From: Haliotis rubra | Lineage: Eukaryota | Reading direction: 5' to 3' | Assembly: GCF_003918875.1 (NCBI RefSeq) | Contig: NW_025767213.1 | Coordinates: 124,001-188,000 of the forward strand | DNA: 64,000 nt | Shown: positions 2,504 to 30,950 of the stretch, piece by piece | How the letters are laid out: every line of letters starts with the position of its first letter | Numbering within the stretch: position 1 is the first letter of the stretch | Notes under the pieces: generated by a model | Databases searched by the model: none | What the model was told of the DNA's origin: nothing | The model's input: the letters and a program-made list of their open reading frames with translations, nothing else | Made by a program: the position numbers and the translations under genes

Positions 2504-2547
2504 TCATTCATTCATTCATTCATTCATTCATTCATTCATTCATTCAT
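2504..2547. repeat. (TCAT)n microsatellite
   Basis: Direct tetranucleotide run. Confidence 0.95.
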
Positions 2548-3595
2548 ACTGCAATATGCTATTTATTCATGTGATTTAGTTATTTTCGGCTCGGCTCAGC
2601 AATACCTCATGTCGCCATCTCTGTCCAATTCTGTTTGGCGGTGTACTGAACTGTAACATGTTAGCAAGTTATAAACGTCCTACGAACAGGCAATTAGTAA
2701 GGAACTGTAATTCCCTATATAAGACACTATGAAATAAGTGTTATAACTGTAAGCCGACCCCAGTATCTATGTCCTCGGTGATAATGAACAACTGAGAGGA
2801 AACGGAGTCAAGGTCACTGAGTCCAACCGAACAGCCCAAAAACGACATCTTTTATAAACAAAGGAGCTAACAGACTACAAAAGTCCATGTTCCACCTTTG
2901 CCCAAATGGGCTGGCATTTCGTGGTAACACAATGGCCGATAGCAGCGCCATGAGCTGCTCCAGTCAAGTCCATCATATGTCCATCCCATTGGGCAATCAG
3001 ATTCCGTCCAACATTGTACTTGATTTGATTTGAACAAAATGGCGGCGCCTGGTCAAGACTATCTGTTATATGATTAAATTTTATTATAGTTAAACGGGTC
3101 TTACTCCGAGAAGTGCATCAAATTAATCACCTTGACTGAACACATGTGTATGGGTGATCGTTAAGGAGGCTGGGTAAAAGGTTTGTTCACTGACATACAA
3201 ATTTTCATAATTTGAATCGAGCTCTCCACAAGTGACAGTTGCACATATAAGTATTACGTGAAAGATCAGGTCCTTCAGGGTTTTTCTATTGCTGTGTCAA
3301 TTTTGGGAGATATAAATATGATATGAAAACTACAAATAGATATTCATACCCCTTTCATTCGAACGTTTCAAATAATGTTGTTTTTTTACGACGTAGTCAT
3401 CAGTTCTCCTGTTTTATCATGGCGGCCTATAAATATAGAGAGATTGACAATCGACCAATACAAACAATTTAAGATGCACATCCAGAATGTCCCCCCACTA
3501 CACTGATCATATGATATGAATGCTACATTCAGCGAGAAGACATTCTGCATGACCAGTGAGCAAATAAACACCTTTGAGGGACGGTTGAATATACC

Positions 3596-5046
3596 CAGTG
3601 TGTGTACCCCTGCTGTCAGTGTGTGTATCCCTGCTGTTAGTGTGTGTACCCCTGTTGTCAGTGTGTTTTCCCCTGTTGTCAGTGTGTGTACCCCTGCTGT
3701 CAGTGTGTGTACCCCTGCTGTCAGTGTGTGTACCCCTGCTGTCAGTGTGTGTACCCCTGTTGCCAGTGTGTGTACCCCTGTTATCAGTGTGTGTACCCCT
3801 GCTGTCAGTGTGTGTACCCCTGCTGTCAGTGTGTGTACCCCTGCTGTCAGTGTGTGTACCCCTGCTGTGAGTGTGTGTACCCTGCTGTCAGTGTGTGTGT
3901 ACCCCTGTTGCCAGTGTGTGTACCCCTGTTATCAGTGTGTGTACCCCTGCTGTCAGTGTGTGTACCCCTGCTTCCAGTGTGTGTACCCCTGCTGTTAGTG
4001 TGAGTACCCCTGTTGTCAGTGTGTGTACCCCTTCTGTCAGTATGTGTACTCCTGTTGTCAGTGTGTGTACCCCTGTTGTCAGTGTGTGTACCCCTGCTGT
4101 CAGTGTGTGTACCCCTGCTTCCAGTGTGTGTACCCCTGCTGTCAGTGTGTGTACCCCTGTTGTCAGTGTGTGTACCCCTTCTGTCAGTATGTGTACTCCT
4201 GTTGTCAGTGTGTGTACCCCTGTTGTCAGTGTGTGTACCCCTGCTGTCAGTGTGTGTACCCTGCTTCCAGTGTGTGTACCCCTGCTGTCAGTGTGTGTGT
4301 GTACCCCCTGCTTCCAGTGTGTGTACCCCTGCTGTCAGTGTGTGTACCCCTGTTGTCAGTGTGTACCCCTTCTGTCAGTATGTGTACCCCTGTTGTCAGT
4401 GTGTACCCCTGCTGTCAGTGTGTGTACCCCTGCTGTCAGTGTGTGTACCCCTGTTGTCAGTGTGTGTACCCCTGCTTCCAGTGTGTGTACCCCTTCTGTC
4501 AGTATGTGTACTCCTGTTGTCAGTGTGTGTACCCCTGCTGTCAGTGTGTGTGTACCCCTGCTGTCAGTGTGTGTACCTCTGTTGTCAGTGTGTGTACCCC
4601 TGCTGTGAGTGTGTGTACCCCTGCTGTCAGTGTGTGTACCCCTGCTGTCAGTGTGTGTACCCCTGCTGTGAGTGTGTGTACCCCTGCTGTCAGTGTGTGT
4701 ACCCCTGCTGTCAGTGTGTGTACCCCTGCTGTCAGTGTGTGTGTGTACCCCTTCTGTCAGTATGTGTACCCCTGTTGTCAGTGTGTGTACCCCTGCTGTC
4801 AGTGTGTGTGTACCCCTGCTGTCAGTGTGTACCCCTGCTGTCAGTGTGTGTACCCCCTGCTGCCAGTGTGTGTACCCCTGTTGTCAGTGTGTGTACCCCT
4901 GCTTCCAGTGTGTGTACCCCTGCTGTCAGTGTGTGTACCCCTGCTGTGAGTGTGTGTACCCCTGCTGTGAGTGTGTGTACCCCTGTTGTCAGTGTGTGTA
5001 CCCCTGTTGTCAGTGTGTGTACCCCTGCTGTGAGTGTGTGTACCCC
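3596..5046. repeat. 21-bp minisatellite (cagtgtgtgtacccctgctgt)n
   Basis: Direct tandem periodicity. Confidence 0.97.
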
Positions 5047-5069
5047 AACACTTTATTGTGCAAGGAAGG

Positions 5070-5410
5070 GTCACGGTTCTGTCGAGACAACATACCGACA
5101 CACTTTGTTGTCTCAAATGCCTGGGGACGACGTTTGTTCTCTAAGGACGACAACACCCATGCTCACGGAGCACGAATCGTCAAGGCGCACCTACAGCACA
5201 CCATCCCTAGAATCCCACGGCCAGCAATCAACCCGAGCTTTCCCCCAACTGTACACGTCTGGGATATGAAAGGGAGGTGCGCGACATGAACCTCCAACTA
5301 CGTTATGTAAACTTGATCAGGCGCTGCAACAGGAGTGCGAGAGATTTCACCAGACTGGGAGAATCGCATGGATGTTGGACAAATCACCGCGGTATTACAT
5401 ACCACTGTTC
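5070..5410 (+). mobile_element. Degenerate Tc1 transposase C-terminal remnant
   Basis: Translation LFSKDDNTHAHGARIVKAHLQHTIPRIPRPAINPSFPPTVHVWDMKGR matches the Tc1 pattern QDDNA.H.A.....W.A.SPDLNPIEH.WD. Confidence 0.7.
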
Positions 5411-5802
5411 CAAAAACGTCAACTTTGGAACCTTTTTCCGAACCTCCTACTATTGTGCTGCATGATCACTTGCGGTCATAACAAGCTGTCATACTCTCAT
5501 CATTCAACACCGGTTGTCCCACATGATCGTTGGCGGGCATGACATATTCTCATGCTGTCATAATTCAACACCGGTTGTTATTTTCCCCAGTTGCATTAGT
5601 ATTGTCGTACAACTAGGATTGAGAAATTACAGTTTTGAAAATCGATGTTATTTCCGAGCATTCAATGCCATTTTGGAGAGTAACTCTATGTTATTGAAGC
5701 ACTGGGGAACGCATTCCTAAATAACAACAGAAGCATTTATCTATTGAGACATTTTATCTAATCAAGGTCAGATATTGTCAGTTCATTGATCTGGGTACGT
5801 TC

Positions 5803-8487
5803 TCACTCCTTCGTCGCTGCATCTGTAAACAACAAACAACTTTAGTAAGCTGTGTGAATGGTAAGCTGGTTTTAATTCCTTTTTAAAGTTTATTTCAAAT
5901 GTAAATCGTTATGTTTTCTTGTTCTGGGATGAAACCTGAAAATCATTAGACATTTTCCATGATGGCAAAACCCGCAAGTATGGTACTGACGGACCAGGGT
6001 TAACTATTGGGTGAATCTAAGATTCGAACCCATGGTCAGTGGAACAGCAGCAATTTAGAACACTGTGTCTACAGTGCATCCTCAAAAAGAAAAAATACGC
6101 CATGCATATTTTTAATGTTTCTCATCTCTTGCTTTTTGTGGACGGGCTTAAAACATGAATAAAAATTTTTTTTTAAATGTTGGCACTAATTGTGCATCTT
6201 CTTTTGTAAAATTTGAAATTTAAATGACCCAATAATGACTTTGAAATAATGTTTAATGTAGATTTAATCCCTTTGCTTCGAAAACAATGTATATAGATTG
6301 ATGAAGAAAGATCAAGATGAGCTGGTTCTAGAGTGGATGAAATGTTAGCGTACGCAGGGCATAAATTTCAATTTCGGGGGCCAAAACTGGCTTAAAAATA
6401 TTTTTAGTGTTTGAATTGTTTAAAGCAGTCAGGAGGTGGGAAACACAAGAGTGAGTGAGTGAGTGAGTTTAGTTTAGTTGTAAATAATCGACTCTGGACC
6501 TGACAATCCAGTTATCAACAGCATAAGAGTCGATCTACGCAATTGGGAACCGATGACCACCCGATCCCGTTAGTCGCCTTTCACGACAAGCATGGGTTGC
6601 TGAAGATCAATTCTAACCCGGACCTTCACGGGTGGGAAACACAAGAAAATATAGACAGCCATACCACGAAGACGTCAGTCCAAGAAAGTTCGACACTGTC
6701 AGTCTTTAAAAGCACCTACAGGCTGAATGTAATCGTGTTGACTTCTTTATTATACATTGGTGATGAATGGGCATGACGCGCTATGCATTATATAGCAGTG
6801 GTTATCCATAACATTCCTAGTCGTGTACACCAGCATTATTCATCATTTCAGTAAAGCTAATAAATAATAAGTGACCGAGTCAAAATAACTTTTAAGCATC
6901 AAGTTTAAACATTAACGATCATATTCTCATGTCTTGTATATAATTACGATAATATACACTTCCTTACTGTTATCAGCCGATGTCATCAACACTTTTACAT
7001 CTCTCGCATTGAATAACACCTCGTCCCGCGATTGGTCAATATCCCTTCCCTGTTTGATGTCTTCGCTCTCAAGATCTGAAACGAATCATGTTCAATTAAC
7101 CTATGTTGGTGATCTAGAGCCGTTCATACAGATATGATGCAATCACGTTAAATAGTGTATATAGAAACTAAGTGTATAAGGCGTAGATAGGTTAGAGGGG
7201 TTGATTATGACATCAAACGTTGTCACATGTTCTATTCCGATTTTGTTCAACCATGAACACTACGTAACACGTGTTGCTTAGACTAACTGATTTCGAATTT
7301 GTTTGGTTGGTTGGTTTGTTGTTTAACGCCACACAGTCCTTGGATGGGTGACCGTGTTTGGCAGTTTGACTCCTGAGAGTTTCTAGGACTTCACTTCTGC
7401 CCCACAACGACTGACTGACTGACTGACTGAATATGGTTTTACGCCGCTTTTAGCAATATTCCAGCAACATCACGGCGGGGGACACCAGAAATGGGCTTCA
7501 CACATGTACCCATGTGGGGATTCGAACCCGTGTCTTCGGCGTGACGAGCCAAAGCTTTAACCACTAGGCTAACAACACACACACACCCACCCCCACCCCC
7601 ACCCCCAACGAAGCACATGTGATACATGTGGTCTTACCTTAGGCAAGTGAGTTTGTTCAAAATTGCCTCGGTTCACCCAGCAGGATGGGTCATGTGACTG
7701 TAACCTTCTAACGCGTAACAGGCAGCTTGGGTTATCCGGGGTAATAATAATCAGATTCTGATTACAAGGTCCAGTGAGCAACTAGTCAGATAGATACTAG
7801 GCGCTAAATATATGAATTATTATCATTACACTCAGCAATATTCCAGCTATATGGCGGCGCTCTGTGAATCGAGTCTGGTCTAGACAATCCAGTGATCAAT
7901 AGAATGGGCATCGATATATCGATTGACTGTATAACCATATGATTAAGCTTTGTCTATTGCAGTTGCATTTTTACAAGCGATGTTTTTTATATTGAATCAC
8001 ACGTCAACCAGTGGAGGATATGCTAAATTAAATTACTAAATTAAATTAAACCTTCCGAAATTCCAAACGATTTTAGCAATTGTAAGACCTTGACATTGAC
8101 AGCAAAGCTGTTCAAAGACTATCAGTGCGAGCTGTTATCCTTAAATTCCTCACGTTACACATTTTGTTGAGTGCTTGTTCAGCAATGGATATCATGTGCA
8201 TATTGCATTAATAACGTATTTATATTCATTAGCCAGTGGATCCGCGACGACACCTTTGATGCTCTCTGCAGCAATACTATTTTTTTCTTGGAATTTCTTG
8301 TGAAACGTGGAGAAAGTTTAAGGCACTCACCTCTTCCATGTAACTTCGTCGTACTTGTTATCCACCGGGACCTATTCATCCTCCTAGTAATTCTCCTCCA
8401 ACTTCTCCTCCCACGCCACTTCCCGTTAGATGCGTCCAGACACACAAGGACCAGCAGCAGCAGCAACAACAAGGGCAGCAGTTTCAT
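5803..8487 (-). CDS. Gene A: spliced secreted cationic (antimicrobial-like) peptide precursor, 94 aa; coding exons 8487-8331, 7075-6968, 5822-5803
   Basis: Acceptor ttgttccag at 8500-8499 and ATG at 8487. Donor AGAG|gtgagt at 8330 (phase 1). Acceptor gtttcag then a 108-nt open exon ending ACA|gtaagg (phase 1). Acceptor ttgtttacag then ATGCAGCGACGAAGGAGTGA. Joined protein: MKLLPLLLLLLLVLVCLDASNG-KWRGRRSWRRITRRMNRSRWITSTTKLH-GR-DLESEDIKQGRDIDQSRDEVLFNARDVKVLMTSADNNAATKE*. Confidence 0.8.
6451..6633 (-). mobile_element. Family B element in the last intron of gene A
   Basis: 16-bp TSD ggtgggaaacacaaga at 6435 and 6631. Confidence 0.88.
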
Positions 8488-9606
8488 CACGCTCAGCTCT
8501 GGAACAACGTGAAGAGTGAAGCATCACTTTCATGGTCAGTATCAGGACAAACGCCAACTGTGTAAACCAGCTGTGGAAGCTGACACGCAACCAACAGAAC
8601 ATACATTAATCAGAGTACTGCTTGAGCTTTCAAGACTGAATTATGTGATTTAAGTTCGGCTTGCAAATAAGAAAACTAGTGATGGCACCACATGTAGCAC
8701 CTGCCACTCACACCAATTTCCAACAAATATTTGAGATGATTTGACATATAGTGAACAAAAGGAAATAATAAACACTACAGCTTAGAAATATCACAAGACA
8801 TTGTGTATGCACCACTTGTCACTAAAATGGTACATGTCTTTTATTGTTTAAAGACTTACTTCAGTTTCCTGATGGCGTTCAAAGACATACTTCAGTTTCC
8901 TGATGGCGTTCTGTGAAAAATCGGGTCAAGGTCAGACAATTAAATTATTGAAACAATGAGTATCGATTTACACAACTGAAAAAAAAATGATGACAGGCAT
9001 CTCATGTAGGTGAGTCTGGCCACCAAATCCCACTAGTCGCCTTTCATGGCTTCTTACGACCAGTTCTAGTCGGGAAGTTAACAACAGGGAAGAGGATAAT
9101 ACAAGCAGTGGGTGAAATCCAGTCGGGCCAGTAAATCTCCAGTCACTAGCCCGACTGGCTAGTGAATTTTCATGGGATCATTTTGTAAATATCTCTCAGA
9201 CTTGATCAGTTATAATACACTTTTAAATCCTGCAAGATTATGGCCTGATAAAAAATGTTCATCATATTAGCAGCTTAATGATGAAACCCGTGTCATGCCG
9301 ACAGTATCCTATTCTCATTTATTTTTGAAAACTTTTGCTTAGTTTCTACATTCAAATGTCGCGCAAGTGAATTATTTTGTGGGCTAGTAACTTTCAGGCA
9401 TAGCTGGCCCGACTGGCTAACAAAATTTGTAATGCTTGTTGAATGCAAACACTTTTTGGGGGAAACAATCTAAGTCTAAAAATATATTTTTGTATCTTAG
9501 CAAAAAATGTCACCAAATCCCTCATTTCTATTATTTTAAAACGCGCACTTACTCACACAAACTGTGAACCCGTAATATACACATAAACAACAACATATAT
9601 ACTCAC

Positions 9607-9710
9607 AAACCGGCTGTTCTGTAAGGACAGGTCGTGGAAGCTGTGTTTGGCTATAGGTATACGGACCACTGATGGAAGAGATCAGTGAAGCCTGTAGTTA
9701 TAAAAAAAGC
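9607..9710 (-). promoter_or_regulatory. Probable TATA-like promoter and non-coding exon 1 of gene A
   Basis: On the minus strand, TTTTTATAA near 9700 is followed about 90 nt later by donor ttt|gtgagt (9606-9601). An upstream exon is required because the ATG lies 11 nt after an acceptor. Confidence 0.4.
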
Positions 9711-11189
9711 AGCGGTAACAGCGTTAACGTCACCGTGATTTTCAGGAGTAACCTACATTTCAAGGTGTGCAACTCAGATGCGATAAACATATGCTCTCAT
9801 TGAACAAACTGATTATCTCATGCCTACGGGGCTTTGGTGCAATCGACCAAACGGAGTCGAGCAGTAATACATGGGCTGTTGATTATTAATATTGTATAAC
9901 TGAATTATCTGTAAAATAAATGTGCTCATAGTATACCAAAATATCACTTCACTTTTTTTCTCATTTTGTCACATAAAAATATCTGAAGGTAGTGTTTCGA
10001 TATTATTGCCTGATGAGCTCTGAAATCTGATTTTCTTCACAGAAAGTGACCAGATACTAGTGAGTGATTGAGTGTGTGATTGAATGTGTGAGTAAGTGGT
10101 GTTTATATGTTAAAAATTACATACGACTCGTAGTTTTTAGCGCAATCGATACATCACTAAACGTAATCATGAAATCGCACCACTATATTGCCATTTACAG
10201 GGAGTAACCTTGAGTAATGATTTATTTCAACCTGCCTTGGAACAGATGTTCTCATAGACTCCAACTAGGACCCGACCCTTATCACCTTGTTGTATACTGT
10301 TGCAATATCGGTATATGATCAGGCGTGGACGTGATGGCAACAGGAGTACATTTCCTCATTAGCTGCTGTTGTTACCGATGATCAAACTACTACATGTAGT
10401 GAGATGACGGTGTTTCACCACTACTACTGAGCGTATTCGCTGCTACAGAAATGATGGCATATACATAGGGAATCTTCCATGCGTTGAGTATAATATCGGG
10501 TCTTTCCCAGGGCTTTCGAGAAGGTGACGATAGGCATATTATCGTTGAACATGAAACATGATGTTTTATCCGACATATGGAATGTCCTATTTTGTGCAAA
10601 TTTTGCGTAGTATGTTAAATTGAACTATTTAATTACAAATTTAAAACATTGAAACGGAAATTCTCTACCTAACACGTGTGTGTGTGTGTGTTTCACCACC
10701 CACTTACTATGTAGTTCTGTTTTTTAAACTTCAAACAAAAAATGGGAAAATATTTGAGATTAATAACAGTCTTTACGCTCTCTTAAGACAAACCGTAAAG
10801 CCTATCGACATATTTACGAGACCTTTGTAGGAAGCGAATGAACACATGAAGAAGCTAACCCACAGTTTTCTTCATAAATTACCACCTGCTATTTTCTGCC
10901 CTGCTTGTGTGAAACTAACGCCACTGAAAAGTCAAAATTATATATTTTCTTACAGAGCACACGCGTGATAGAGATATTTAGCGGGAAGGTAACACCTGCA
11001 TGAAGCAGTCTTGTCAAAGTGTTACGTTAACTGCAGCGAAAAATCGAGTGTTATGCTCACACTGTATACTGAAAGTATCATATTTCTAAAGAAAACATGA
11101 ATATAAGACATGAATTTAGGATACACTTACACATTCCACCAGTTAATAGTTTGGATCATTTTGTATGGTAACGTCATATAGGTTTAGTT

Positions 11190-11880
11190 CCGATTTTGAC
11201 AGTCCCAATCTTGACAGTGAAAATTCACACTTCTGTAATAGATCTAGCCATTTATCCCAATTTTGACAGTGAGCTCACCGGTCGTCCCATTTTTGACAGA
11301 GCTCGGCTCACACATGTTAATTAATCCCTGATTAGCCAGTGGTTGTGGGGGCTACTGTAACAGAGGACTAAAACAAGAAAGACTAAAGCTAAAACAGTTT
11401 ATTCTTGAAAGTCAATCACTTCAAAGTCACCAATCACTGAGCAACGCTTCCAGCCAGCACACTGCCACAGGCAGAAAGATATGACGCCACATCTCTGTCA
11501 CATGTCATGTATTCCAAACCAAGTTGGTACAAAGTTGCTGAAGCATTTTCAACACGGCGTCTCTTCATCTGTGTCTGTCCAAAAACAATGATCCTGCTAA
11601 CGCTGTTGTCATCTACCAGTAGAAAGTCTTCTCCTCGGTCTGTTGTAGCCCATTCTCCATCAAGCTGTAGTTATTGGGCGTCTTTTGGAGTACGTGGGAC
11701 CTTCTTGGTTCTTTGTCTGTTCAGACTTGACTCGATACTCTCGTACATCTGAAGACGCTGTAAAAAATGGGACACTACAGATTGTGGCACATCTCCGAGG
11801 AATGTTAACGATAGGACTAGTGAGGTTCTTTAGTTTGTATCTTACTTTATCATGACAGCCAGGACCCAACTGTGATCCAG
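11190..11880 (-). mobile_element. Mutator/MULE-like transposase remnant with subterminal repeats
   Basis: A minus frame reads SIESSLNRQRTKKVPRTPKDAQ*LQLDGEWATTDRGEDFLLVDDNSVSRIIVFG, typical of the segment preceding invertebrate MULE domains. Four cc.attttgacag-type repeats at 11190-11300. Confidence 0.5.
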
Positions 11881-11902
11881 TTGTCATTCTTGGTACAAAA
11901 TA

Positions 11903-13488
11903 TACTCAGAAGCAAAAAAACGTCAGTACGTATTAAAAATGAAATAAGCACTGTAATCAAATCATTACAGAAATGGACATAATAAGCCAATCAAAAACAT
12001 TTTTTGTGTACAATATCTTGACACATCAATGAATAACACTGCACAATTTCAAGACATTACGTGAACGTTTGCAGTCCATTCAGACTCTTGACTTCAGTAT
12101 CTAGTGTGACCACCACGAGCGGCACAGAGTGCACCAATCCATTGATTAAGGCCATTGGCCCCCGTAACCACACTCTGAGAAATGCAATAAATCGGCTGTG
12201 TTCGGCCTTGGTATGACATTACTCAGTCTCCTCTGAATTCCATCCCAAAGATGTTCAGTTGGGATTAAATCAGGACTAAGGGCTGGTCACTGCACAATGT
12301 TGACACCGTTCTGCTGTAGGAAGTCCCGTGTAACTCTGGCAGTATGGGCCTGGGCGTTATCATGCTTGAAACTGTTGTTCCGGTGACGTGCGAATTGTGG
12401 CATGACGTGGGGTCTGAGAGCTTGGTCGATGTAGCGCACCGCTGTGATGCCGCCTCCTCTCCATGGACCAAGGTTCTGGAACACCACAGGACCCACTCTC
12501 TGGTTCAGGCCTATTCCACCCCATGCCATGATGCTTTCACCTCCCCATGAGTCTCTTTCCATAACACATTGGTCTGAGTAACGCTTGCCACGTCGTCGCC
12601 ATGTTCTTGTTCTGCCATCTGCAGTTGATACGCAGTACCGACTCTCATCTGTGAACAGATCCATTGCCTGTAACGCCAGTTTTCGTAGACGTTCACGCCG
12701 ATGACGAGGGGTGAGGATAGGTCCAGGGTGAGGTCTACGGCAACGGAGGTTCCCGCTGTTAAGACGTCGGCGTACTGTATCTGTACTGATTGGTCTTCCG
12801 TGTGTTCCCACTGTCTGCGTGCTGTTTCGGATGCCTGCATGAAGGGATTCTGTACATGATGTTGCACAACATGGCGGTCTTGTGGTGACCCTTGAGAGTG
12901 GAGCGATCATTTGTGGTGTTGGTGGCCCGGAAACGTTGCTGCAGCCTGTAGATGGTCCGAACGTTGGCCTGGAAGTTATTAGCCAGCTTCAAGTCTTCCT
13001 AGCGCCTGGTTCCTCTGAGCTGTCGTGAGTCGCGGCATCCTGCTGACGTTGTAATGTGAACAGGGGCGTAGCTACCATTATAAAAAAAAGCCCGGGCTGA
13101 CACGTGATTTTTGCTAAAAAGGTTGGGCAAGCCCTCAATACTATCTAAATATAAAGCTTTGCAACCTATCGGGCTTACACGAGAAAAATGGCTTGCTACG
13201 CGCCTGGCGAATGTTTCTACCAGGTTGGGGTGCATTTTATAGGGCCGGTCCTTGTGAACAGCACGTGCAGCATGAGTTGCATGAAACACATGGAGAACAC
13301 CGTACCATCTCCGAAGTCAGGTTGCGTTTTTGAGACCATTTCCTGGGTTCAATTCTTAGTTTATGAAGGAATGTCAGGTAAAGTTGGAGATGTTGTCAAA
13401 AATAAACAATCAAACCATTAAATGAGTTTACTGTTATACGTTTATGCGAAGGAAAATTCCAAACTGACGTTTCTTTTGCTGCTTAGTA
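11903..13488 (-). mobile_element. Tc1/mariner DNA transposon with decayed transposase (13038-12094)
   Basis: TIRs of about 25 bp (TACTCAGAAGCAAAAAAACGTCAGT / ACTGACGTTTCTTTTGCTGCTTAGTA) flanked by TA. The transposase starts MPRLTTAQRNQALGRLEAG, contains FTDESRY, HDNAQAH and NPTEHLWD, and ends GGHTRY*. Stops and frameshifts are present. Confidence 0.92.
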
Positions 13489-14618
13489 TATATAGTCACT
13501 GAGACAGCTTCGTTTCAACTTAGATGCTGATATTTGTGATGCCTCACGTGCAAGACGTGTAATTAAACATTGCCATATGGCGCCTTATGTTGTGTAATTT
13601 TTAGTACATATATAAATCAACCTTATTAAATTATGTACTGAATGTACTGAATGTACTGAATGCACTGAATTATGTACAGGTAAACATCGATAAAACGCTT
13701 TACATAAACACGTTAATAAAATGAGCAAAATCTTAAAGTGAACTCTGCTGTACGAGATATTTTCATAGGTTATGGAGGGAGTTTTGTCGCATTTATTGTA
13801 CAAGTGCAATAGCTGGAAATTACAAATATACTCGTACAAGCAACAGGTGCGTACTGATGTGGAAATACTTAATGCAGAACATCCCGGCCAGAAATACGTA
13901 CTTACCCTCTACCAAACATTTAACGAGTACAATATATATCAAATCTCATTTGTTAAACCTCCATGACCCCTATTCATCACTGCGTTAAAGTACCCCACTT
14001 GCTATTACCTTGTGGGGTAATGGTTGGCTTTGCGCCCTTTCCTAACACATGGGCCACAAAGCAATATTTTGTGTTACAAAGCACGGGGCAATACGATGAC
14101 CGGCAGTGAATGAGTGTGTATGGAGCAGCGTTGTATATAGTTAGTATGGCGTTGCCCCAAACCACATGAAAATGCAACAAATCGTTCAAAATCAAAATAT
14201 CCCATTTATAATGAAACATAGATATGTAACTATTTGCTATTTGACTTGCTAGAATGTCACAGATGTACAATCTTGACGTAAAACACTGACACTGGGGTTG
14301 TTGTTTTTATAATGTTTTTGTGTTTTTCATTGAATTCTACAACCCACACTCTACAAAACAACTCATCTATGTATCTCGGTTGTAGTGTTACCTCATCAGC
14401 AACATATAAAACTGACACATCCTGTTCACACAACATGGAAAGTGATTTAGTGCGCATAAAAGCCAGCCTCCATGCTCCATTGCCCAATAATCATTTCTCG
14501 CACCTTTCCAACGCAGAGGACGGTATCACCTTTCATGAAGGACCATTTTGTAAATAGTTAATGTAGGTGTAAATAGTTTTTTAACACTGTCTCTCTCTAT
14601 ACATACTAAACATGGGTG

Positions 14619-14969
14619 GACCGCCTCCGTGGTGTAGTGGTTAGAGCGTCCGCCCGGAGAGCGGAAGGTCGCGAGTTCGATCCCCGACCGCGTCATACCA
14701 AAAGACGTTAAAATATGGTACTTGTTGGTCCCTGCCTGGCGTTTGGCATTACTGGGTACAACAAGGACTGGTCGGCTCGGAGTCAGTATAATGTGTCTGA
14801 GTGGGGTATTCATGCTTCACTGCGGCATGGTATCTCAGTGGGCTAGCACTATAAAACCAGCTTCAGTCTGGGCTAGTACAAGCAGCCGCACATACACATA
14901 CACGAGCATGCACGTCGTCATATGAGCGAAATATTCTCAAGCACGACGTTAAACCCAATTTCACCTCAC
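14619..14969 (+). mobile_element. tRNA-derived V-domain SINE (RUDI-like, family C)
   Basis: A-box TGGTGTAGTGG and B-box GTTCGATCC, V-domain-like GTCATACCAAAAGACGTTAAAATATGGTAC, (cacct)n tail, TSD ctaaacatg at 14606 and 14970. Confidence 0.85.
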
Positions 14970-16512
14970 CTAAACATGCGCGATATGAGTCACCCGAGGT
15001 ATTATGAAACACCATCCCATGACTGAGAGAGTTTCTTTTATCTGATTCAGTAGCTATGGAGGAGACTCCCGTCTCTTTTCATTTGGTAAACAGAACGTCC
15101 GGGTATTGTTCCATATTCTGACTTGTACCCTTCGTTTCAGTGTATTTTAAAGCAAATAATTGCCTTGCCCTTGTATGTGGGTATGACGGGTGTTAGAATT
15201 CAGGATTCGCTCACCTGTTCATCTGGTATTATAACTATTTCACCGACTTAAAACCATTTGAGTCAGTAAGTGGGTATTGCTGTAAGCCACTGTTAGCAAT
15301 ATTCCAGCAATATCACGGCGAGGGAACACGAGAAATGGGCTTCACATATTGTACCTATGTGGGGAATCGAACTCGGACATTCAGCGTGACGATTGAACAC
15401 TTTAACTGCTGGGCTACCCCACCGCCCCAGAGGCATCAGTAGGTTTGATTCGTCGTCTAGGCAACATTTCATCAGAGTTTATTTATGTTTTACACCATGC
15501 GTTCTGCGAAATAAATAAACATAACATGGATTAATATTCATTATATTCGTTAAACAAGAAAATAAGTAAATAAATAAATGTAATTCTTCTGAGAAATGTG
15601 CTGGAACTCTGTGTGTGCAGGAAATGTAACTCCAGTTGTCTGTAAGTAAATAACTGGTCGCAGGATTGTACCGATTACATCAGGTGTTGTCTCTGAAGAC
15701 AAACTGTCCAAACGTAGTTGCGCCTTTTCACATTTGTCTTCGTTTGCAATCGTTTACTGAGGTGCAGAATCGGTCGGGTAGCCTAGTGGTTAAAGCGTTC
15801 GCTCATCACGCTGAAGATCCGGTTTCGATTCCCCACATGGGTACAATGTGTGAAGTCCATTTCTGGTGTTCCCCAACGTGATATTGCTGGGATATTGCTA
15901 AAAGCGGCGTGAAACTGAACCCACTCACTCACTATTTGTTTGTGATTCATAGACGCCAGCTTATGATAAAGTCGTGCAAAGTTTCCTGCTTACACCTGAG
16001 ATCTGGAACCAATATGGACATGGTTTTCTTGCTTTTACTGCAATTATTTCATGGAAATGGCCGTCTGTGATATTTACTCTAATATTTTAATGTAAACTGT
16101 TATTTAACTGTAAATACTTGTGTTCAATCTTTAATGTTTTACTGTACTTTGGGAAATAATATATGAACGTTGGGCAAATGTTCAAACTTTGTCACAGCCA
16201 ACCGATTGTCAAAGCAAGTCCATCTATCAAATGCATAATCTGATGGTGATAACAGATGCCATTATTGTTTTACACCTCACATACGCGCGATCCACGCAAC
16301 TGACACTACACGTAACACAACTTCCATGAACACAGACACATGGCGCCAGAGATAAAACTTATCAGGAAGTACCTGGTGCACGCTTGGCACTGTTTTATCG
16401 ATTGCACTCCTCTTCAAAACACGTGCTATCAGCCAATCCATGGATCTGGATATGGTCCTTGATTACATGACAGAAGGGATGAGTGAGTGAGTTGGGTGTA
16501 ACGTCGTGTTAA

Positions 16513-16951
16513 GGTCACACAAACCAAATATTCTTCCATTGACTTCTATAGCAACGCTATATTTTTGTACAAAAATATCTTAGCCACCAACAGTTTTTAC
16601 ATGTACCTGTGTGTATAGTCTGGCCTTAAAGAAGCAATTAAAATATATAAAAATATATATAATGATCACCTCAGCCAGCTGCTTGTCCGTGTACAGGAAG
16701 CTAAACAGACCAACAACAGTTCCGCACAAAATGTCCACAGCTTGAAAATACCTGTTGTCACATTCAGCGTAAGTCATTGTGTTAAAAAAGACAGCATTAA
16801 ATATGAAAAATAGGGTCAGTTATAAAAAATCTGGATAAATGTACAGTTTAGAAACAAATTCACCCAATCGCAACTAGCAGATGATTCAGTTTGCACTATC
16901 CAGCCACAAGTGCTTGTTAAAGTAGCGATTCTGACTTGGTGTAGTGTAACC
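16513..16951. mobile_element. TTAA-flanked non-autonomous DNA transposon (Kolobok-like termini)
   Basis: TTAA|GGTCACACAAACCAA ... TTGGTGTAGTGTAACC|TTAA, interrupting a SINE tail. Confidence 0.6.
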
Positions 16952-17628
16952 TTAACAGTATTCCAGCCTCAAGTGATTCAGGTTGCTGGTAGAACAGCCA
17001 GGTGTGCGAGTTTCACGTGTGAAATAGAATTTTTTTTATACGGATGTCCAAAGTTATGAGACAAATCGTCAGTGTTGATTTGTCGATTTCATGCGACTGT
17101 GCAAAATTGGATTTTGTTAGATTATTAGATTTGTGTTAGTGAGCAATTCATCTGTCTCAAATTAAATTAAACGGACTGTAAATATCTACTGGTTATTACA
17201 TTGTACGATTCTGGGTATAGTATAGCCATGTGTTCATTATTCACTATCAAATACTGACAATGTATGGCGTCCGTAACACGGTGAGCGTATAGTGTCCAAA
17301 CGATGGCAAGGGTCACAAACACATGTAAAGCCAGATCAACGTTTCACCTGAAAAAGAGCATGGACATATGGTACCCAAAAATAGGGAATGTTTCTGCATC
17401 GTCTCAAAAGTGAAATGGTCGAGTTGAGTTGGCGTTTAACGTCACTGTACAAGAAATAAGCTATATTGGAAAACAGTTAATTGGAAGAAGAAAGATAGAA
17501 GCCACAAAATCCTTTCCACATCCATTAGAAATCTCAGCTAAAGATATCATGAGTAAACAAATTGAGTCTTGACCTAAGTCCAGTTAAGTGGTTATCGACA
17601 AATATATTGTGCTACCATCCCAAACATA

Positions 17629-17787
17629 TACTGAGAGAACCAAATAAAGGATCACAGAAAAGTTCAAGTGTTAAAATTTTCCAGTTTTGATCGCCAGTTT
17701 TGAATAGCGCTGTGGGAGAAAATGTGAGAAACAAATAAAGGAACACTGCCATGTAGTGGCGTTCCCTTATTTGTTTCTCTCAGTATA
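17629..17787. mobile_element. Small Tc1-type MITE
   Basis: TACTGAGAGAACCAAATAAAGGA / CCCTTATTTGTTTCTCTCAGTA inverted termini in TA context. Confidence 0.7.
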
Positions 17788-18731
17788 TTATATCGGGGAA
17801 CATTTTAATTAGAAATAATCAATACTGGCATGGGACAACCTACCTCAGTAAATGCATGGTAAATTAACGTTGGTTCCGGGAAGGTTGTAACGTAGCACCA
17901 TGCTTTTACCAAATACACGTATTATATACAAGCTCAAAATGTCCATTTTGATGTGTGCAACGGTGTGACTATTTCATAGGCGGATCATGAGTTTTAGTTC
18001 GCTTCCCTATTAAATTTCAGCGTTTACTCTAATTCAACCCTGAAAACGCCTTAGTAACTGTGTATACACGGTGACACCTCGAATTCATTTGGACGAATTT
18101 CAATTCGCGGACACCTCTTGTCATCATTCATTTTCAGCGATCTGTATACTTTCACTGCTTAGTTGCCCTTTACGCCCAATGGAATTTGTTTCGTTGGATT
18201 AGAGGGACTGCACATTCTTTGGCGTTAACATTTTATCATGAATATGGTGTATCTCATTGTCTAAATTGTAGTCGACACTGATTCTGGCACAGTGTGGGGT
18301 GTTGGGGTAGCCTAGTGGTTAAAGTGTTTGCTCGTCACGCTGAAGACCCGGGTTCGATTCACCTTATGGGTACAATGTGTGAAACTCATTTCTTGTGTCC
18401 CTCACCGTGATATTGCTGGAATATTGCTAAAAGCAGCGTAAAACTGAACTCACTCATTCACTGTGGTACTCGGGTATGTCGGATTTTTGTTCGGGTATGT
18501 CGGATTTTGTGTAAAAGCCCAAAGACTACGAGGATTTGAGACTGTTCAATGTTTCCTGATGGGGATGCAGAACAGCCATTATCATCAGTCGAAGTGGCGC
18601 ACCTGTTGTGGCCTCCAATGTGGCTTCGTACAGCTTGTGTTACGGAAGGAGGGTTCATGTTCTGTGCGATTGTGTCCTGATCACACCACAAGATCTTTTA
18701 TCTGTACTTGTCAAAAATGCCACTGTTTTAC

Positions 18732-18783
18732 TATAAATACAGCGACAAGTTCTGGTCGATCACAAAACCCTTTGACAAGAGAG
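18732..18783 (+). promoter_or_regulatory. TATA box and short non-coding exon 1 of gene B
   Basis: TATAAATA at 18732-18739 and donor gag|gtaaac at 18784. The matching acceptor tttag|G ATG lies at 19291-19296. Confidence 0.6.
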
Positions 18784-19293
18784 GTAAACTGTGTCTTTCA
18801 TTTACTCTTTCCACCATCTTCTGTGGGGCAAGCGTTTCATTCAAATATCCATGTTGTAATTGTATATTTCAGCTCGGCTTCAGTTCATGCCTCTTAGTAT
18901 ATCATGATAAATGATGTGTCTTTTTTGTAGTTTTATCAGTGTCTGAGGGTTTGCCTTGCGACAAGTTTAGCTATACCACAGCAACATGTAATTAATCTCT
19001 TACAGTAAACTGTATGCATCGGTATACAAAGATTCAATTCATATTTTCCTGGTATTTTGGATGAAGATAGCTCAATATATCATGATAAATTACGTATATT
19101 TCAGCTCGGCTTCAGTTCATGCCTCTTAGTATATCATGATAAATGATGTGTCCTTTTTGAATTTTCATCAGTGTCTGAGGTTTCGCCTTACGACACTTTT
19201 AGCTATACCACAGCAATACTGTAATTAAGCTCTTCCAGTAAGCTATGTGCATAGGCATGCAAAGATTCATTTTATATTCTCCTGGTATTTAGG

Positions 19294-21551
19294 ATGAAGA
19301 TAGCTCTGGTGTTTCTCCTGCTGGTGGTTGTCTTCGTAATCCAGGACACAGATTCCTGGAGAAGAAGGAGAAGAAGAAGGTGGTTCAGAGCTCCAAGAAT
19401 ACGCATCAGGAAGATATTCCGACCCGTCACTAAAGTCATAAAGAAGATAAGGCCGGTGTTGAAGAAAATTATCAAACCCATCGTCCAAGGAGTCAAGGCA
19501 GTTGTCAAACCCATTTTGAAACCATTACAGGCAAAGGTGTGTGCCCCGCTCCAGTGCCTAACTGGCCGAGACCTAACTTGGCAGACGGAGCCTGACAATT
19601 CTGTGGAAGAAAGAGGCACTGGAAAAGATCTGGAAGAACAGTCTGACAAGATGATGACAAAGAAGAGCGCAAGAGATGGAGGACTGGTTGGAGATGTACG
19701 ACAAGGAGGGTCGAGTCTTGGAGGGTCTGAATGAGCTGGTGAATACCAAGCGGGACGTGAGGGAACTTCACCAAGTCCTGCAGGATCCTGTCAGGTCCAA
19801 GAGGTTGTTGAAGTACGTGGGCAAGGCGCTGTGTGGAAAGACCGGCGGTAGCCAGGATGGAAGTGAAGATGGCCAGGGTCCGGAAGAGGACGTTGATCAA
19901 GTTGTCACTGTCCCTTACACTGTCATTGAGTACGTGACAGCAGCTCCTGCCGGTGAGTGATTATGTAAATCGCGGCCAAAAGGGTAAAGAACATTATAGA
20001 GCGTTATACATATGGTATCAATATTGATTTTGTCGATGACAAGTGTTCTCCATTCAAAGTTTAACCAACCAAACAAAGATAACGGCTGTGCAGTGTTTTC
20101 TACTTTCGATTTACATCTTAGACGTCATATGATATAAGGTCATCCGTAATGTGTTACTCATTTGAAACCTCAGCAAGGAAGAGAGCGGGTTGGCGTAACA
20201 AATCATATAATATAAAAAATGTTTTAAACTATTCTTCACTAATTGTGTAACTATTTTGTGAGATTTTAAAATGCGGGTTGGCGTCACAAATCAAATGATA
20301 TAAAAAATGTTTTAAACTATTCTTCACTAATTGTGTAACTATTTTGTGAGATTTTAAAATGTAGATCACGGCTACATGCAATGTTTTCGATTCACATCTA
20401 AAACATCATATTGATATTAGGTAATATATAATGTTGTATGTGATGCCCATGTAAGAAACAAAGACATGACAAGAGCGGACGTGCGTAAACAATAAATTAG
20501 TATATAGAATATTACAAAAACTATTCTTCACTAATTGTATAACTTCTTTCAGATTTTAAAATGTGGATCACGGCTACATGCAATTTTTCTACTTTCGATT
20601 CACATCTAAAACGTCATACTGATATAGGGCATCTGTGATGTTGTATGCAGTACTCATTTATTAACTTAGCCAGGAAGAGAGCGGGCGGTCGTAAAATGAA
20701 TCATTGTGAAAATATTTTAACAATTATTCTTCACCAATTGTGTTTTAACATATTCTATGAGATTTAAAACTTTAATCACTGGTTATAATTTTAAACTAAT
20801 TTTTCATGAAGATCGAGTCATGTTGGTTCAGAAACATTTTTAATTACAGTTAAAAAAAATATAAATCAAACTGACCTGGGATTTTTATGAGTGTGCGAGA
20901 GTAAGAGTTTTTCTATTACATCAGGGCACAGATTTCGTTAGACGGTTAAAATAGAGATAAGAAATTTATTTTACAATTTCACGTCGGGGTGAAAATACAG
21001 GGCCGCCATGCGGGAGATGGGAAACACATTCGAGAATATGTATATCCACGATAAACACATTTATATGCAAATTGTAGTGGCAGGTGCTACCGGTAGAGCA
21101 GGACAACCTTTCCGTGAACAACACATATTTTCAGTGACGCTTTAATATAGTTTCAACTACTTCGAACGTCATGTAGAATCGATTTCAGCAGATATTGAGA
21201 GTGATTTTCTATCTGACTGTGACGCAAGCCATAGTGCCTAATCCACATTTTTGTAATCTCTGCCAGGCTTCTGTAATACACAACCTTTAAACAAGCAAAT
21301 CTAGTTTTCTTAGGTTCAGTTTCTCAGTTTCCAAGGCCTATGAGATAGTTGGGGGTTTTTTTCAGTTTAAATGGAGTTATTTGGTACTATCAGAATTTTA
21401 TAGTTTAGATAACATAGCGTTAGTCTATGTAAGCGAGTAATCGTTAGTTAACTATACTTACATTATAAATGTATTTTATAACTGTGAGTTAAACCATCCT
21501 TCCGAAACTGAAGATATAAAATTTAATTTTGGATACTTTTTTTCAGGGTAG
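19294..21551 (+). CDS. Gene B: secreted multi-peptide cationic (antimicrobial-like) precursor, about 220 aa after correcting a +1 frameshift near 19663; exons 19294-19952 and 21547-21551
   Basis: Signal peptide MKIALVFLLLVVVFVIQDTDS, then a 69-aa peptide (13 R, 11 K, no D/E) followed by GR-DL. ORFs 19294..19734 and 19676..19960 join if one A at 19663/19664 is removed, giving MMTKR-AQEMEDWLE. Donor GCCG|gtgagt at 19953, acceptor ttttttcag|GG TAG at 21546, AATAAA at 21605-21610. Confidence 0.8.
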
Positions 21552-22067
21552 ACCTCGAGAAGACTCCGTATAACCCACTCATCTGTACTGAGTATGATTG
21601 TCTCAATAAAAACAAGCAATGCATAAAAACGTGTTTCTTATTTCGTACAGTACAAAATGCTACTGACATAGTTCAAATGCCGAATGTCATTATATCCTAC
21701 AAGATCGATGCTCATGCTGTTCATCACTGGATTGTCTGGTCCAGATTAGATTATTTTACAGGCAGCCGCCATATAGCTGGAATATTGCTGAGTGCGGCGT
21801 TAAAAACAAACAACAAACAACATATGCTTGTCGTATGAGGCGACTAACGGGATAAGCTGACCAGGCTCGCTCAGTTGGTTCATGCATGCCATCGTGTCCC
21901 CAGAGTACAGACCAATGCTCATGAGACCAATCACTGGATATTCTGGTTCAGACTGTTATTTGCAGACCGTCTTTATAGAGCTGGAGTATTGCTGAGTGCC
22001 GCTTAAAACAGCAAAGAAACAAACAATTGTAAATGATGTAATCAATTCACCAGACAACCAGGAAGTT

Positions 22068-30060: not shown

Positions 30061-30559
30061 CATTACGGTATGTGTAAGATCGCTAATGGCTCCTCCATGT
30101 CGACAAGAAATGTCTAATTAATCCGACTAGTCTACTCTTAAATTCTGACACTAAATGCTGTAAATTTACATCTCGTCTAAAAATAGTTTGAAGATCTGCA
30201 TAAACAATTCTTTCGGACTATTTGGAATTATTATTGTCTATAGCAGCTGTACGAGGATCCCAGTCATCATGTTTTACATCGGGTAGTTCGGGTTGGCTTT
30301 AGTTCTGGAATCTAAAGAGTGTGATATCATATATAACGTCTACCTACGAGGACTGTTGTCCTGTCATTGTACAGCTGTTTGCTTGTCTAACGAGAGTCTT
30401 CAGATATCACAATCACTCGACAAAGAGTGGACATGCCAACGACGTTGTCGTAAATCACCCAGAACATTGAAGCGTTATGAATGGACTCCGTCGTTTAGTC
30501 GGGTACGGCAGTAGGGTCTTTCGCCATTCTCTCTGTGCCCAGCATCACCGTGTGAGGCA

Positions 30560-30950
30560 AGTAGATAGGTGGGAAGATCGGTAGGTAGATACATAGGCAG
30601 GTAGGAGAGTAGGCAGGTAGATATATAGGCAGGTAGAGAGATGTGCAGGTAGATAGATAGACAGGTAGGAGGATAAACAGGTAGGAGAGTAGGCAGGTAG
30701 ATAGACAGGTAGGTAGGTAGAGATATAGACAGGTAGACTAGTAGGCAGGAGGGCACATGTGAGCGAGGAGGCAGTCAAACAGGTAAGATGCAGACAGACA
30801 GACAAACAGGTATACACGTAGGCGATAAGACAGACATATAGACATGTTGAAAGGGAGAAATGTAGGCAGGTAGACGGGAAGGCAGACAGACAGGCAAACA
30901 GGTAGACACGAAGGCAAACAGGTAGATACGTCGATAGGTAGATATCTATG
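30560..30950. repeat. Degenerate tetranucleotide tract (AGGT/AGAT/AGAC)n
   Basis: Purine-rich low-complexity sequence. Confidence 0.9.

What the first reader, a model, noticed from the sequence alone, without database searches (positions are those of the whole stretch)
5803..21610. Divergent pair of spliced Trp/Arg-rich cationic peptide precursor genes: candidate new antimicrobial-peptide family
Seen in sequence: two head-to-head genes about 9 kb apart with the same design. Each has a predicted non-coding exon 1, an ATG just after the intron-1 acceptor, a 21-22 aa hydrophobic signal peptide, a mature region opening (K)WR with no acidic residue, an identical GR-DL junction, an acidic pro-region, and a tiny last coding exon after a phase-1 gtgagt/gtaag intron. 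Established: signal + cationic peptide + Gly-basic site + anionic C-terminal propiece is the layout of mussel myticalins and fish piscidins, and Gly-Arg signals amidation. Inference: a lineage-specific, fast-evolving gastropod AMP family that annotation would miss because gene A is split into small exons and gene B is frameshifted. I cannot confirm novelty without a search.
Basis: partly seen in the sequence, partly recalled or inferred. Interest (0 to 1): 0.92.

Follow-up and report, generated by a model that had tools for sequence, protein, structure and literature searches.

The report
Abalone cationic secreted-peptide gene pair
Two neighbouring abalone genes do encode secreted, very positively charged peptides built like known antimicrobial-peptide precursors, but their relatives are already annotated as uncharacterised proteins and no expression or killing activity has been shown.

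Summary
The window is Haliotis rubra DNA: bases 1-6372 are 100% identical to QXJH01000052.1. Gene A (- strand) and gene B (+ strand) both encode a signal peptide, an acid-free polycationic stretch (+11 over 28 aa; +24 over 69 aa), an invariant G-R|D-[LIV] junction and an anionic tail.

Both are real genes of a family found only in Haliotis.
- B has RefSeq orthologues in H. asinina (four isoforms) and H. rufescens. The TATA box and exon-1 donor are conserved in three species.
- A has a tandem paralogue just outside the window (LOC124292502) and an H. asinina orthologue.
- The divergent A/B arrangement recurs in H. asinina.

- Relatives are annotated, as "uncharacterized protein".
- B is not fast-evolving (dN/dS about 0.2 throughout). 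Only A's cationic core is.
- Homology between A and B rests on about 30 N-terminal residues.
- B's frame break is one extra A in a lightly polished Nanopore-based assembly.

No Pfam match, non-Haliotis homologue or paper was found. The layout and A's exon plan mirror mussel myticalins, without shown homology. Antimicrobial function is the best guess (about 0.5) and is untested.

The parts
8331..8498 (-). Gene A exon 2: 11 nt of 5'UTR, ATG at 8487, signal peptide (8487-8422), 28-aa cationic peptide (8421-8338), Gly-Arg (8337-8332), and the first base of the Asp codon. Donor GTGAGT follows, in phase 1.
   Evidence: The paralogue A1 and the H. asinina orthologue are spliced at the same GR|D point in RefSeq models.
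6968..7075 (-). Gene A exon 3: acidic pro-region containing the conserved EVLFNARD motif. Donor GTAAGG follows, in phase 1.
   Evidence: It is 92.6% identical, together with its flanking intron, to paralogue A1. Relative to A1 it carries 13 extra bases at its 3' end. Relative to H. asinina it is one base shorter.
5803..5822 (-). Gene A last coding exon: 5 2/3 codons plus the stop in the frame given by canonical GT-AG splicing.
   Evidence: A1 and H. asinina read the homologous exon in the other two frames, so the tail is unconstrained or this copy carries a 1-nt error.
18732..18783 (+). Gene B core promoter (TATAAAT at 18732-18738) and short non-coding exon 1, ending at 18783 before GTAAA.
   Evidence: The TATA box and the CAAAACCC.TTGACAAGAGAG|GTAAA block are conserved in H. 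rufescens and H. asinina.
19293..19952 (+). Gene B main exon: ATG at 19294, signal (19294-19356), 69-aa cationic peptide with C-x4-C (19357-19563), Gly-Arg (19564-19569), then the long acidic pro-region. Donor GTGAGT follows, in phase 1.
   Evidence: The protein is 84-91% identical to H. asinina and 67-79% to H. rufescens. dN/dS is 0.15-0.27 in every segment.
19657..19660 (+). Frame break in gene B: four bases where the intact orthologues have one codon, giving an A-run one base longer.
   Evidence: Four-sequence DNA alignment and two-frame tblastn matches.
21547..21610 (+). Gene B last exon: it completes a Gly codon, then TAG (21549-21551), the 3'UTR and AATAAA at 21605-21610.
   Evidence: The H. 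rufescens RefSeq coding sequence ends at the homologous TAG (L003:12231-12233). H. asinina isoforms X3 and X4 end ...AAPAG as well.

Best explanation
These are two real, divergently transcribed genes of an abalone-restricted family, and they encode secreted pre-pro-peptides. In the proposed mechanism, the signal peptide directs the precursor into the secretory pathway. The acidic C-terminal propiece offsets the polycationic segment during transit and storage. Cleavage at the invariant G-R|D-[LIV] junction, trimming of the Arg, and conversion of the Gly to an amide then release a peptide. From A this is a 28-aa Arg/Trp-rich peptide. From B it is a 69-aa Arg/Lys-rich, proline-kinked amphipathic peptide with a short C-terminal disulfide loop. 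The most likely role is host defence, that is, membrane-active or cell-penetrating antimicrobial peptides.

Shown here: the gene structures, their conservation, the charge layout, the restricted taxonomic range and the different evolutionary rates of A and B. Inferred: the processing site, amidation, the disulfide and the antimicrobial function.
For: - Gene reality. Orthologues and paralogues exist in three Haliotis species. The splice sites, TATA box and poly(A) signal are conserved. B has dN/dS of 0.15-0.27.
- Conserved arrangement. In H. asinina the A-type gene lies on the minus strand and the B-type gene on the plus strand of one chromosome, 36 kb apart.
- Layout. Signal peptides are 21-23 aa. 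The cationic stretches carry +11 to +26 with no acidic residue and pI 12. The propieces carry -2 to -13. The peak helical hydrophobic moment in B is 0.84-0.91.
- Junction. G-R-D-[LIV] is invariant in all nine A- and B-type sequences seen: six proteins plus three H. asinina isoforms.
- A-type evolution resembles that of antimicrobial-peptide families. The signal (between the H. rubra paralogues) and the RWxxSTTKLHGR motif are conserved, with dN of 0.04-0.08. The cationic core has dN of 0.4-0.6, about equal to dS, plus indels and tandem duplication.
- The same layout, the same Gly-Arg amidation logic and the same exon plan are documented for mussel myticalins, which have measured MICs (PMC5577615). 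That plan is a UTR-only exon 1, an intron just before the ATG, an exon 2 carrying signal, mature peptide and cleavage site, then a phase-1 intron.
- The nearest named clusters by protein-language-model features are pleurocidin, bombinin, cecropin and dermaseptin precursors. Scores are 0.64-0.73, which the tool rates as leads only.
Against: - No transcript, tissue, induction, peptide or activity evidence was obtainable. Exact-product look-ups found only genome records.
- B's cationic domain is long (67-72 aa) and conserved, unlike arms-race antimicrobial peptides.
- B's pro-region of about 130 aa is itself conserved and predicted helical. This suggests it has a function of its own.
- G-R|D is not a dibasic or furin site. 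From my own knowledge of monobasic processing rules, B also lacks a basic residue at -4, -6 or -8.
- A1 and the H. asinina A-type peptide contain poly-Met runs that look like (ATG)n expansions, which is odd for an antimicrobial peptide.
- The language-model scores are below the tool's reliability threshold.
- Both window copies differ by one base in frame-critical places from their orthologues.
Confidence: 0.52

Rival explanations
1. The products are secreted polycation/polyanion proteins with a non-immune role. Candidates include gamete (acrosomal or egg-coat interacting), mucus, adhesive or matrix components. They may act unprocessed, as self-neutralising zwitterions whose charge blocks govern dense packing and release in seawater.
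For: Abalone already use charge-complementary packing of highly cationic secreted proteins (lysin +12, sp18 +22) with the anionic FITZAP, and those proteins evolve fast (PMC6952181). The A-type genes show little or no purifying selection outside a few motifs. In exon 3, H. rubra against H. asinina gives 13 non-synonymous and 1 synonymous change. B's large conserved pro-region argues that more than a disposable spacer is encoded.
Against: There is no sequence similarity to lysin, sp18 or FITZAP. FITZAP is anionic, with poly-Asp directly after the signal. None of five family motifs occurs in the 28 supplementary files of the H. laevigata shell-matrix proteome. The invariant Gly-Arg junction, placed exactly at the charge switch, looks like a processing and amidation site.
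Confidence: 0.2
2. They are precursors of regulatory peptides (neuropeptide or hormone-like). The amidated products, and possibly further peptides cut at the KR and RR sites of B's pro-region, would act on receptors rather than on microbes.
For: A signal peptide, a Gly-basic amidation motif, and dibasic sites (RR, KR, SKR) in B's conserved pro-region. B is under purifying selection, as expected for a ligand. Progonadoliberin clusters appear among distant language-model neighbours of A1.
Against: Net charges of +11 to +26 and lengths up to 72 aa are far outside the usual neuropeptide range. That comparison rests on my own knowledge. A-type cores change length by up to 19 codons between paralogues, which is hard to reconcile with a receptor ligand. 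No neuropeptide Pfam family matched.
Confidence: 0.1
3. The family is real, but the two copies in this window are decaying pseudogenes. Gene B would be disabled by a true frameshift and gene A by a shifted C-terminal frame.
For: B has one extra A at 19657-19660 relative to three intact orthologous sequences, which leads to a stop at about 19732. A's exon 3 is one base shorter than in H. asinina, which changes the last-exon frame. Myticalin clusters also contain pseudogenes. Neither window gene appeared as an annotated protein in the length ranges searched.
Against: The assembly is Nanopore-based, with two rounds of Racon and a single round of Pilon (PMC6774278), so single-base homopolymer errors are expected. 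B has no other defect, and its downstream part still shows dN/dS of 0.21 against H. rufescens. A keeps an intact ORF and splice sites, and its change touches only the last few propiece residues.
Confidence: 0.3
4. The two 'genes' are chance ORFs with signal-like and basic stretches in repeat-rich DNA.
For: The region is full of SINE and transposon relics.
Against: There are cross-species orthologues with conserved splice sites, promoter and purifying selection.
Confidence: 0.01

Closest known systems
Myticalins (and modiocalins) of mytilid mussels (PMC5577615)
   Same: The precursor order is signal, Arg-rich cationic peptide with pI above 11, cleavage site often leaving Gly-Arg for amidation, then an anionic C-terminal extension. 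Gene A follows the same exon plan: the intron just before the ATG is predicted only, since exon 1 was not located; exon 2 carries the signal, the mature peptide and the cleavage site; a phase-1 intron follows. The family is multigenic, with a hypervariable mature region, a conserved signal and propiece, and broken copies. A-type peptides resemble the Pro-poor, Arg-rich subgroup C in composition.
   Different: No sequence homology was shown. The signal differs from the myticalin consensus. The conserved Lys-Arg site is replaced by G-R|D. Gene A has one extra intron. Gene B lacks the junction intron, has a peptide about twice as long, and has a conserved pro-region of about 130 aa. The host is a gastropod, not a bivalve. 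Activity is untested.
Fish piscidin/pleurocidin precursors (Pfam PF08107)
   Same: The layout is signal, short cationic amphipathic peptide, then an anionic C-terminal propiece. These are the nearest named language-model neighbours of the A-type protein.
   Different: There is no Pfam match. The sequence is unrelated. The Haliotis peptides are much more highly charged.
hdMolluscidin, the dibasic-repeat AMP purified from abalone gill
   Same: An abalone, linear, very basic peptide.
   Different: [quoted passage not shown] Both are present here.
FITZAP (sp6) with lysin and sp18 of abalone sperm (PMC6952181)
   Same: These are small, secreted, Haliotis-specific, rapidly evolving proteins whose biology depends on pairing polycations with polyanions.
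   Different: FITZAP is anionic (-6 to -16), with poly-Asp right after the signal and two exons. Lysin and sp18 are folded proteins of 16-18 kDa. There is no similarity to A or B.
Ranid frog 'Rana box' peptides (brevinin/esculentin). Recalled from memory, a lead only.
   Same: A long amphipathic cationic helix ending in a short C-terminal disulfide loop, as B's C-x4-C or C-x7-C suggests.
   Different: The frog propiece is N-terminal and acidic. There is no sequence relationship. The disulfide in B is inferred.

Membership tests
Myticalin family | Precursor order: signal peptide, cationic Arg-rich peptide (pI above 11, more than 10% Arg), anionic C-terminal extension | tested here: met
   pI 12, 18-32% Arg, no acidic residue in the cationic part, propieces of net charge -2 to -13.
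Myticalin family | Gene plan: UTR-only exon 1, intron immediately before the ATG, exon 2 carrying signal, mature peptide and cleavage site, then a phase-1 intron | tested here: inconclusive
   Gene A: the phase-1 intron directly after G-R is present, and an AG acceptor lies 11 nt before the ATG, but exon 1 was not located. Gene B: exon 1 and the intron before the ATG are conserved in three species, but there is no intron at the junction.
Myticalin family | Conserved Lys-Arg dibasic cleavage site between the peptide and the extension | tested here: not met
   All A- and B-type sequences have G-R|D-[LIV] with no dibasic pair at the junction.
Myticalin family | Sequence homology in the signal peptide or the anionic extension (the paper's criterion: BLAST e below 1e-5; signal consensus MKGxxLLLLTIxxALCMIxECEG) | tested here: inconclusive
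By eye, A's signal shares only MK, the Leu run and one Cys with the consensus. The B profile found no non-Haliotis relative among 1.84 billion representatives.
Myticalin family | Measured antibacterial activity of the mature peptide | not testable with these tools
   Needs synthetic peptides and MIC assays.
Piscidin/pleurocidin (PF08107) and other Pfam AMP families | Match to the family HMM | tested here: not met
   hmmscan against Pfam-A at E up to 1 gave no AMP family for P0001, P0003, P0004, P0005 or the window's B C-terminal piece.
Molluscidin | Precursor without a signal peptide and without an anionic pro-region | tested here: not met
   Both a signal peptide and an anionic propiece are present. 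The family definition comes from PMC5577615.
FITZAP / sp6 | Net anionic small protein with an N-terminal poly-Asp tract after the signal; two exons | tested here: not met
   The region after the signal is polycationic with no Asp. The family definition comes from PMC6952181.
Gene-encoded cationic host-defence peptide precursors (generic kind) | Secretory signal, a releasable cationic amphipathic or Arg/Trp-rich segment, and a charge-masking propiece | tested here: met
   The helical hydrophobic moment reaches 0.72 in A and 0.86 in B.
Gene-encoded cationic host-defence peptide precursors (generic kind) | Expression in immune or barrier tissue, induction by microbes, microbicidal activity | not testable with these tools
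   No transcript contigs were found by exact-product look-ups. No paper mentions the loci or the motifs.

The most novel reading that the evidence does not exclude
A and B are the founding members of a Haliotis-specific family of gene-encoded linear cationic antimicrobial peptides. They would be the first myticalin-style AMPs in a gastropod. The family would have two arms. One is a rapidly diversifying, tandemly duplicating Arg/Trp arm (A). The other is a conserved 67-72-aa amidated, proline-kinked amphipathic arm with a C-terminal disulfide loop (B). The two arms share an unusual G-R|D activation site. A bolder extension is that the shared exon plan reflects common descent with mussel myticalins, which would imply an ancient molluscan AMP superfamily invisible to sequence search. 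I give that extension about 0.1.
Probability: 0.45. Interest if true: 0.62.

Novelty: new member of a known kind. Interest (0 to 1): 0.45.

Why it matters
Few gene-encoded antimicrobial peptides are known from gastropods. For abalone the list is essentially defensin and macin types, histone- and hemocyanin-derived fragments, and molluscidin. Abalone aquaculture suffers badly from Vibrio and other infections. A family of linear, easily synthesised, extremely cationic peptides would therefore give directly testable antimicrobial candidates and markers for immune studies. It would also offer a second, independent example of the myticalin design. That would allow a test of whether this precursor and gene architecture is convergent or ancient in molluscs. 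If the products are not antimicrobial, a conserved 69-aa +24 peptide fused to its own polyanion is still an interesting case of charge-masked secretion in an animal already known for polyion packing of sperm proteins.

Tried and rejected
1. Transcript evidence. The Logan contig L002 (DRR299178) is colinear with genomic DNA, including intron 1 and a SINE, so it is not cDNA. Exact-product look-ups for P0003, P0004, P0005, P0008 and P0010 returned only genome records or nothing.

2. Remote homology. Pfam gave only sub-threshold noise (L27, DUF7938). The HMMER profile of B hit only two repetitive low-complexity proteins, through an 'LLGRDIDID' repeat; I judged these spurious. phmmer of the B peptide against PDB hit only designed coiled coils.

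3. Structure. The AlphaFold2 model of P0001 has mean pLDDT 45. It suggests helices but is too poor for a fold search, so none was run.

4. A-B homology through the pro-regions. Smith-Waterman scores were not better than shuffles in 8 of 9 pairs. The only DNA matches were interspersed-repeat copies and short chance-level words.

5. A formal comparison with myticalins. The paper's supplement holds no precursor sequences.

6. The shell-matrix rival. The motifs are absent from the H. laevigata shell proteome supplements.

7. The FITZAP/sp6 identity was considered and rejected.

8. Exon 1 of gene A. A candidate donor at about 8900 is not conserved in the paralogue.

9. A 244-aa gene model spans the whole H. 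rubra locus L001 on gene A's strand. I could not retrieve it, so I cannot say whether RefSeq fuses gene A into it.
Full report
**What is there**

The region was read on both strands and spliced in silico.

Gene A lies on the minus strand. An AG acceptor sits 11 nt before the ATG at 8487. Exon 2 runs to 8331 and is followed by GTGAGT. Exon 3 is 7075-6968, followed by GTAAGG. The last exon starts at 5822, and the stop ends at 5803.

The 94-aa product has four parts:
- a 22-aa hydrophobic signal;
- a 28-aa peptide with 9 Arg, 2 Lys, 3 Trp and no acidic residue (net +11, pI 12);
- Gly-Arg;
- a 42-aa acidic tail (net -5).

Gene B lies on the plus strand. It has a TATA box at 18732-18738, a short exon 1 ending at 18783, and a 509-nt intron ending just before the ATG at 19294. 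One long coding exon runs to 19952|GTGAGT. A final exon at 21547 completes a Gly codon and gives TAG. AATAAA follows at 21605-21610.

The B product has a 21-aa signal and a 69-aa peptide with 13 Arg, 11 Lys, 7 Pro, 2 Cys and no acidic residue (net +24). Gly-Arg follows, then D-L and an acidic region. The frame breaks after about 121 codons.

**Identity of the DNA**

Window 1-6372 is 100% identical to the H. rubra contig QXJH01000052.1. So the window is blacklip abalone.

The best hit of gene A is XP_046585578.1 (LOC124292502, 118 aa). It is therefore not an orthologue. It is a tandem paralogue, here called A1, on the same strand. Its ATG lies about 9.4 kb beyond A's last exon, just outside the window.

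**Are they real genes?**

Yes. For gene B the evidence is as follows.
- It is 84-91% identical to four RefSeq isoforms of one H. asinina gene (XP_067676144-147).
- It is 67-79% identical to H. rufescens LOC124145172.
- It also matches a genomic contig from read set DRR299178.
- The H. rufescens coding sequence ends at the TAG homologous to 21549-21551, after the same phase-1 intron.
- The TATA box, the exon-1 donor block and the acceptor before the ATG are conserved in all three species.
- Nei-Gojobori dN/dS between H. rubra and the two northern sequences is 0.17-0.23 for the signal, 0.15-0.22 for the cationic region and 0.20-0.29 for the pro-region. This holds for the part downstream of the frame break as well.

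Gene A has the paralogue A1 and an H. asinina orthologue (XP_067675187.1, 112 aa). Both are spliced at the same GR|D point.

In H. asinina the A-type gene is on the minus strand and the B-type gene on the plus strand of chromosome CM074531.1, 36 kb apart. The flanking DNA is colinear with the window. The head-to-head pairing is therefore conserved between these two species. No A-type gene lies within 10 kb upstream of B in H. rufescens.

**The frame problems**

B's break is four bases (19657-19660) where three intact sequences have one codon. An A-run is one base longer.

The H. rubra assembly was built from Nanopore reads, with two Racon rounds and one Pilon round (PMC6774278). B shows no other defect. 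An assembly error is therefore at least as likely as a recent pseudogene.

Gene A's exon 3 is 13 nt longer than A1's and 1 nt shorter than the H. asinina exon. As a result, the three genes read the homologous last exon in three different frames, each ending after 6-14 residues. The extreme C-terminus is evidently unconstrained, or the window copy again carries a one-base error.

**Evolutionary pattern**

The two genes behave differently.

B is conserved throughout, including its cationic domain.

In the A-type genes, conservation is confined to a few elements: the signal (between the H. rubra paralogues only), the motif RW-x-x-STTKLHGR just before the junction, and EVLFNARD in the propiece. 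For the signal and the junction motif, dN is 0.04-0.08.

The core of the A-type cationic peptide has dN of 0.4-0.6, about equal to dS. It also differs by indels of up to 19 codons. These include poly-Met runs in A1 and H. asinina that look like (ATG)n expansions.

Between H. rubra A and H. asinina, exon 3 shows 13 non-synonymous and 1 synonymous change. The counts are too small to test.

'Fast-evolving' therefore applies to A only.

**Are A and B one family?**

The evidence is modest. In favour:
- hhalign of the two small alignments matches only residues 1-31 of A to 1-30 of B, that is, the signal and the first Arg-Trp residues. Probability is 91% and the pairwise E-value is 9e-7.
- The G-R-D-[LIV] junction is invariant in every member of both types.
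- Each gene has a canonical acceptor just upstream of the ATG. For A the matching exon 1 was not found.
- The genes are neighbours in two species.

Against:
- The pro-regions are not significantly similar.
- The only DNA similarity between the two genes is interspersed-repeat copies and short chance-level words.

I rate ancient paralogy at about 0.6-0.65.

**Relatives and annotation**

No Pfam family matches. A HMMER profile of B, searched against 1.84 billion cluster representatives, found only the Haliotis cluster and two spurious repeat proteins. Word-seeded searches for A found only H. rubra and H. asinina.

All database names are 'uncharacterized protein'. No paper in the searchable library contains the LOC identifiers or four diagnostic peptide words. 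A 2025 review lists only the following for abalone: molluscidin, macins, and LGBP- and hemocyanin-derived peptides.

**Function**

Nothing experimental could be brought to bear.

The case for host-defence peptides is architectural and comparative. Myticalins have the same precursor order, the same Gly-Arg amidation logic and the same exon plan as gene A. They also show a hypervariable mature region, pseudogenes in the cluster and measured MICs (PMC5577615).

The protein-language-model atlas places A1 next to pleurocidin clusters. It places B next to bombinin, cecropin and dermaseptin precursors. The scores are 0.64-0.73, and the tool itself rates such scores as leads only.

B's peptide has a very high helical hydrophobic moment (0.86). 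The low-confidence AlphaFold model makes residues 41-80 helical.

Several points argue against a simple antimicrobial reading:
- B's length and conservation;
- B's large, conserved, helical pro-region;
- the non-canonical monobasic junction;
- the odd poly-Met runs in the A-type peptides.

**Rivals checked**

- FITZAP/sp6 and the lysin/sp18 system were examined because abalone sperm use polycation-polyanion packing. FITZAP is anionic, with poly-Asp after the signal, so membership is excluded. The concept still supports a non-immune 'self-neutralised secretion' rival.
- Molluscidin is excluded because it has no signal peptide and no propiece.
- The family motifs are absent from the H. laevigata shell-matrix proteome supplements.

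**Verdict**

The genes are real and restricted to Haliotis as far as could be searched. The interpretation as a new AMP-like family is plausible but unproven, at about 0.5.

This is a new family within a known kind of system, the secreted cationic peptide precursors with an anionic C-terminal propiece. It is a useful and easily testable lead rather than a surprise.

Noticed in passing
L001:10001-13877 (H. rubra QXJH01000052.1, about 3.6-7.5 kb beyond the window's left end): A tandem paralogue A1 of gene A (LOC124292502, 118 aa). It has a 47-aa, +20 peptide containing a poly-Met run that appears to derive from an (ATG)n repeat. The duplicated segment extends about 2 kb upstream of the ATG.
   Followed up: yes
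L001:1-23877 (covers window 1-6372, on gene A's strand): The collection records a gene model with a 244-aa product that spans the whole 23.9-kb locus and runs over both ends, enclosing A1 and the last exon of gene A. I could not retrieve the protein. It may be a read-through or fused model, or a host gene with A and A1 inside an intron.
   Followed up: partly
window 18987-19073 vs 19217-19300: A tandem duplication inside intron 1 of gene B copies the end of the intron and the first bases of exon 2. The copy carries a decoy ATGAAGATAGCTC but no AG acceptor.
   Followed up: partly
window 12287-12910 (-): A 207-aa ORF that looks like a Tc1/mariner-type transposase relic, in the A-B intergenic region. 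This is judged from the translation only and was not searched.
   Followed up: no
window 7409-7571, 15259-15428, 15771-15933, 18296-18462, 31614-31782, 44927-45096, 48411-48570, 52583-52746, 58500-58664: Many copies of a roughly 165-nt repeat, apparently a tRNA-derived SINE (judged by eye, no tRNA search was run). Copies are 80-94% alike and occur in H. rufescens too. One copy sits in intron 2 of gene A and one about 270 bp upstream of gene B's TATA box.
   Followed up: no
window 33363-34253 (+), conserved block 32957-34404: A single-exon ORF (296 aa, basic, low complexity), 83% identical at DNA level to an annotated 343-aa single-exon gene downstream of B in H. asinina (L004:18038-19069). It has no Pfam hit on record. 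This is the conserved syntenic neighbour of gene B.
   Followed up: no
window 27954-28663 and 30545-31212: Tandem-repeat arrays that give long repetitive ORFs on the minus strand. They are also repeated in the syntenic H. rufescens and H. asinina DNA.
   Followed up: no
L004:9990-10020 (H. asinina): Isoforms X1 and X3 of the B orthologue begin six codons upstream (MLLVFR), inside what is the 3' end of intron 1 in the other isoforms. This implies intron retention or an alternative start.
   Followed up: partly
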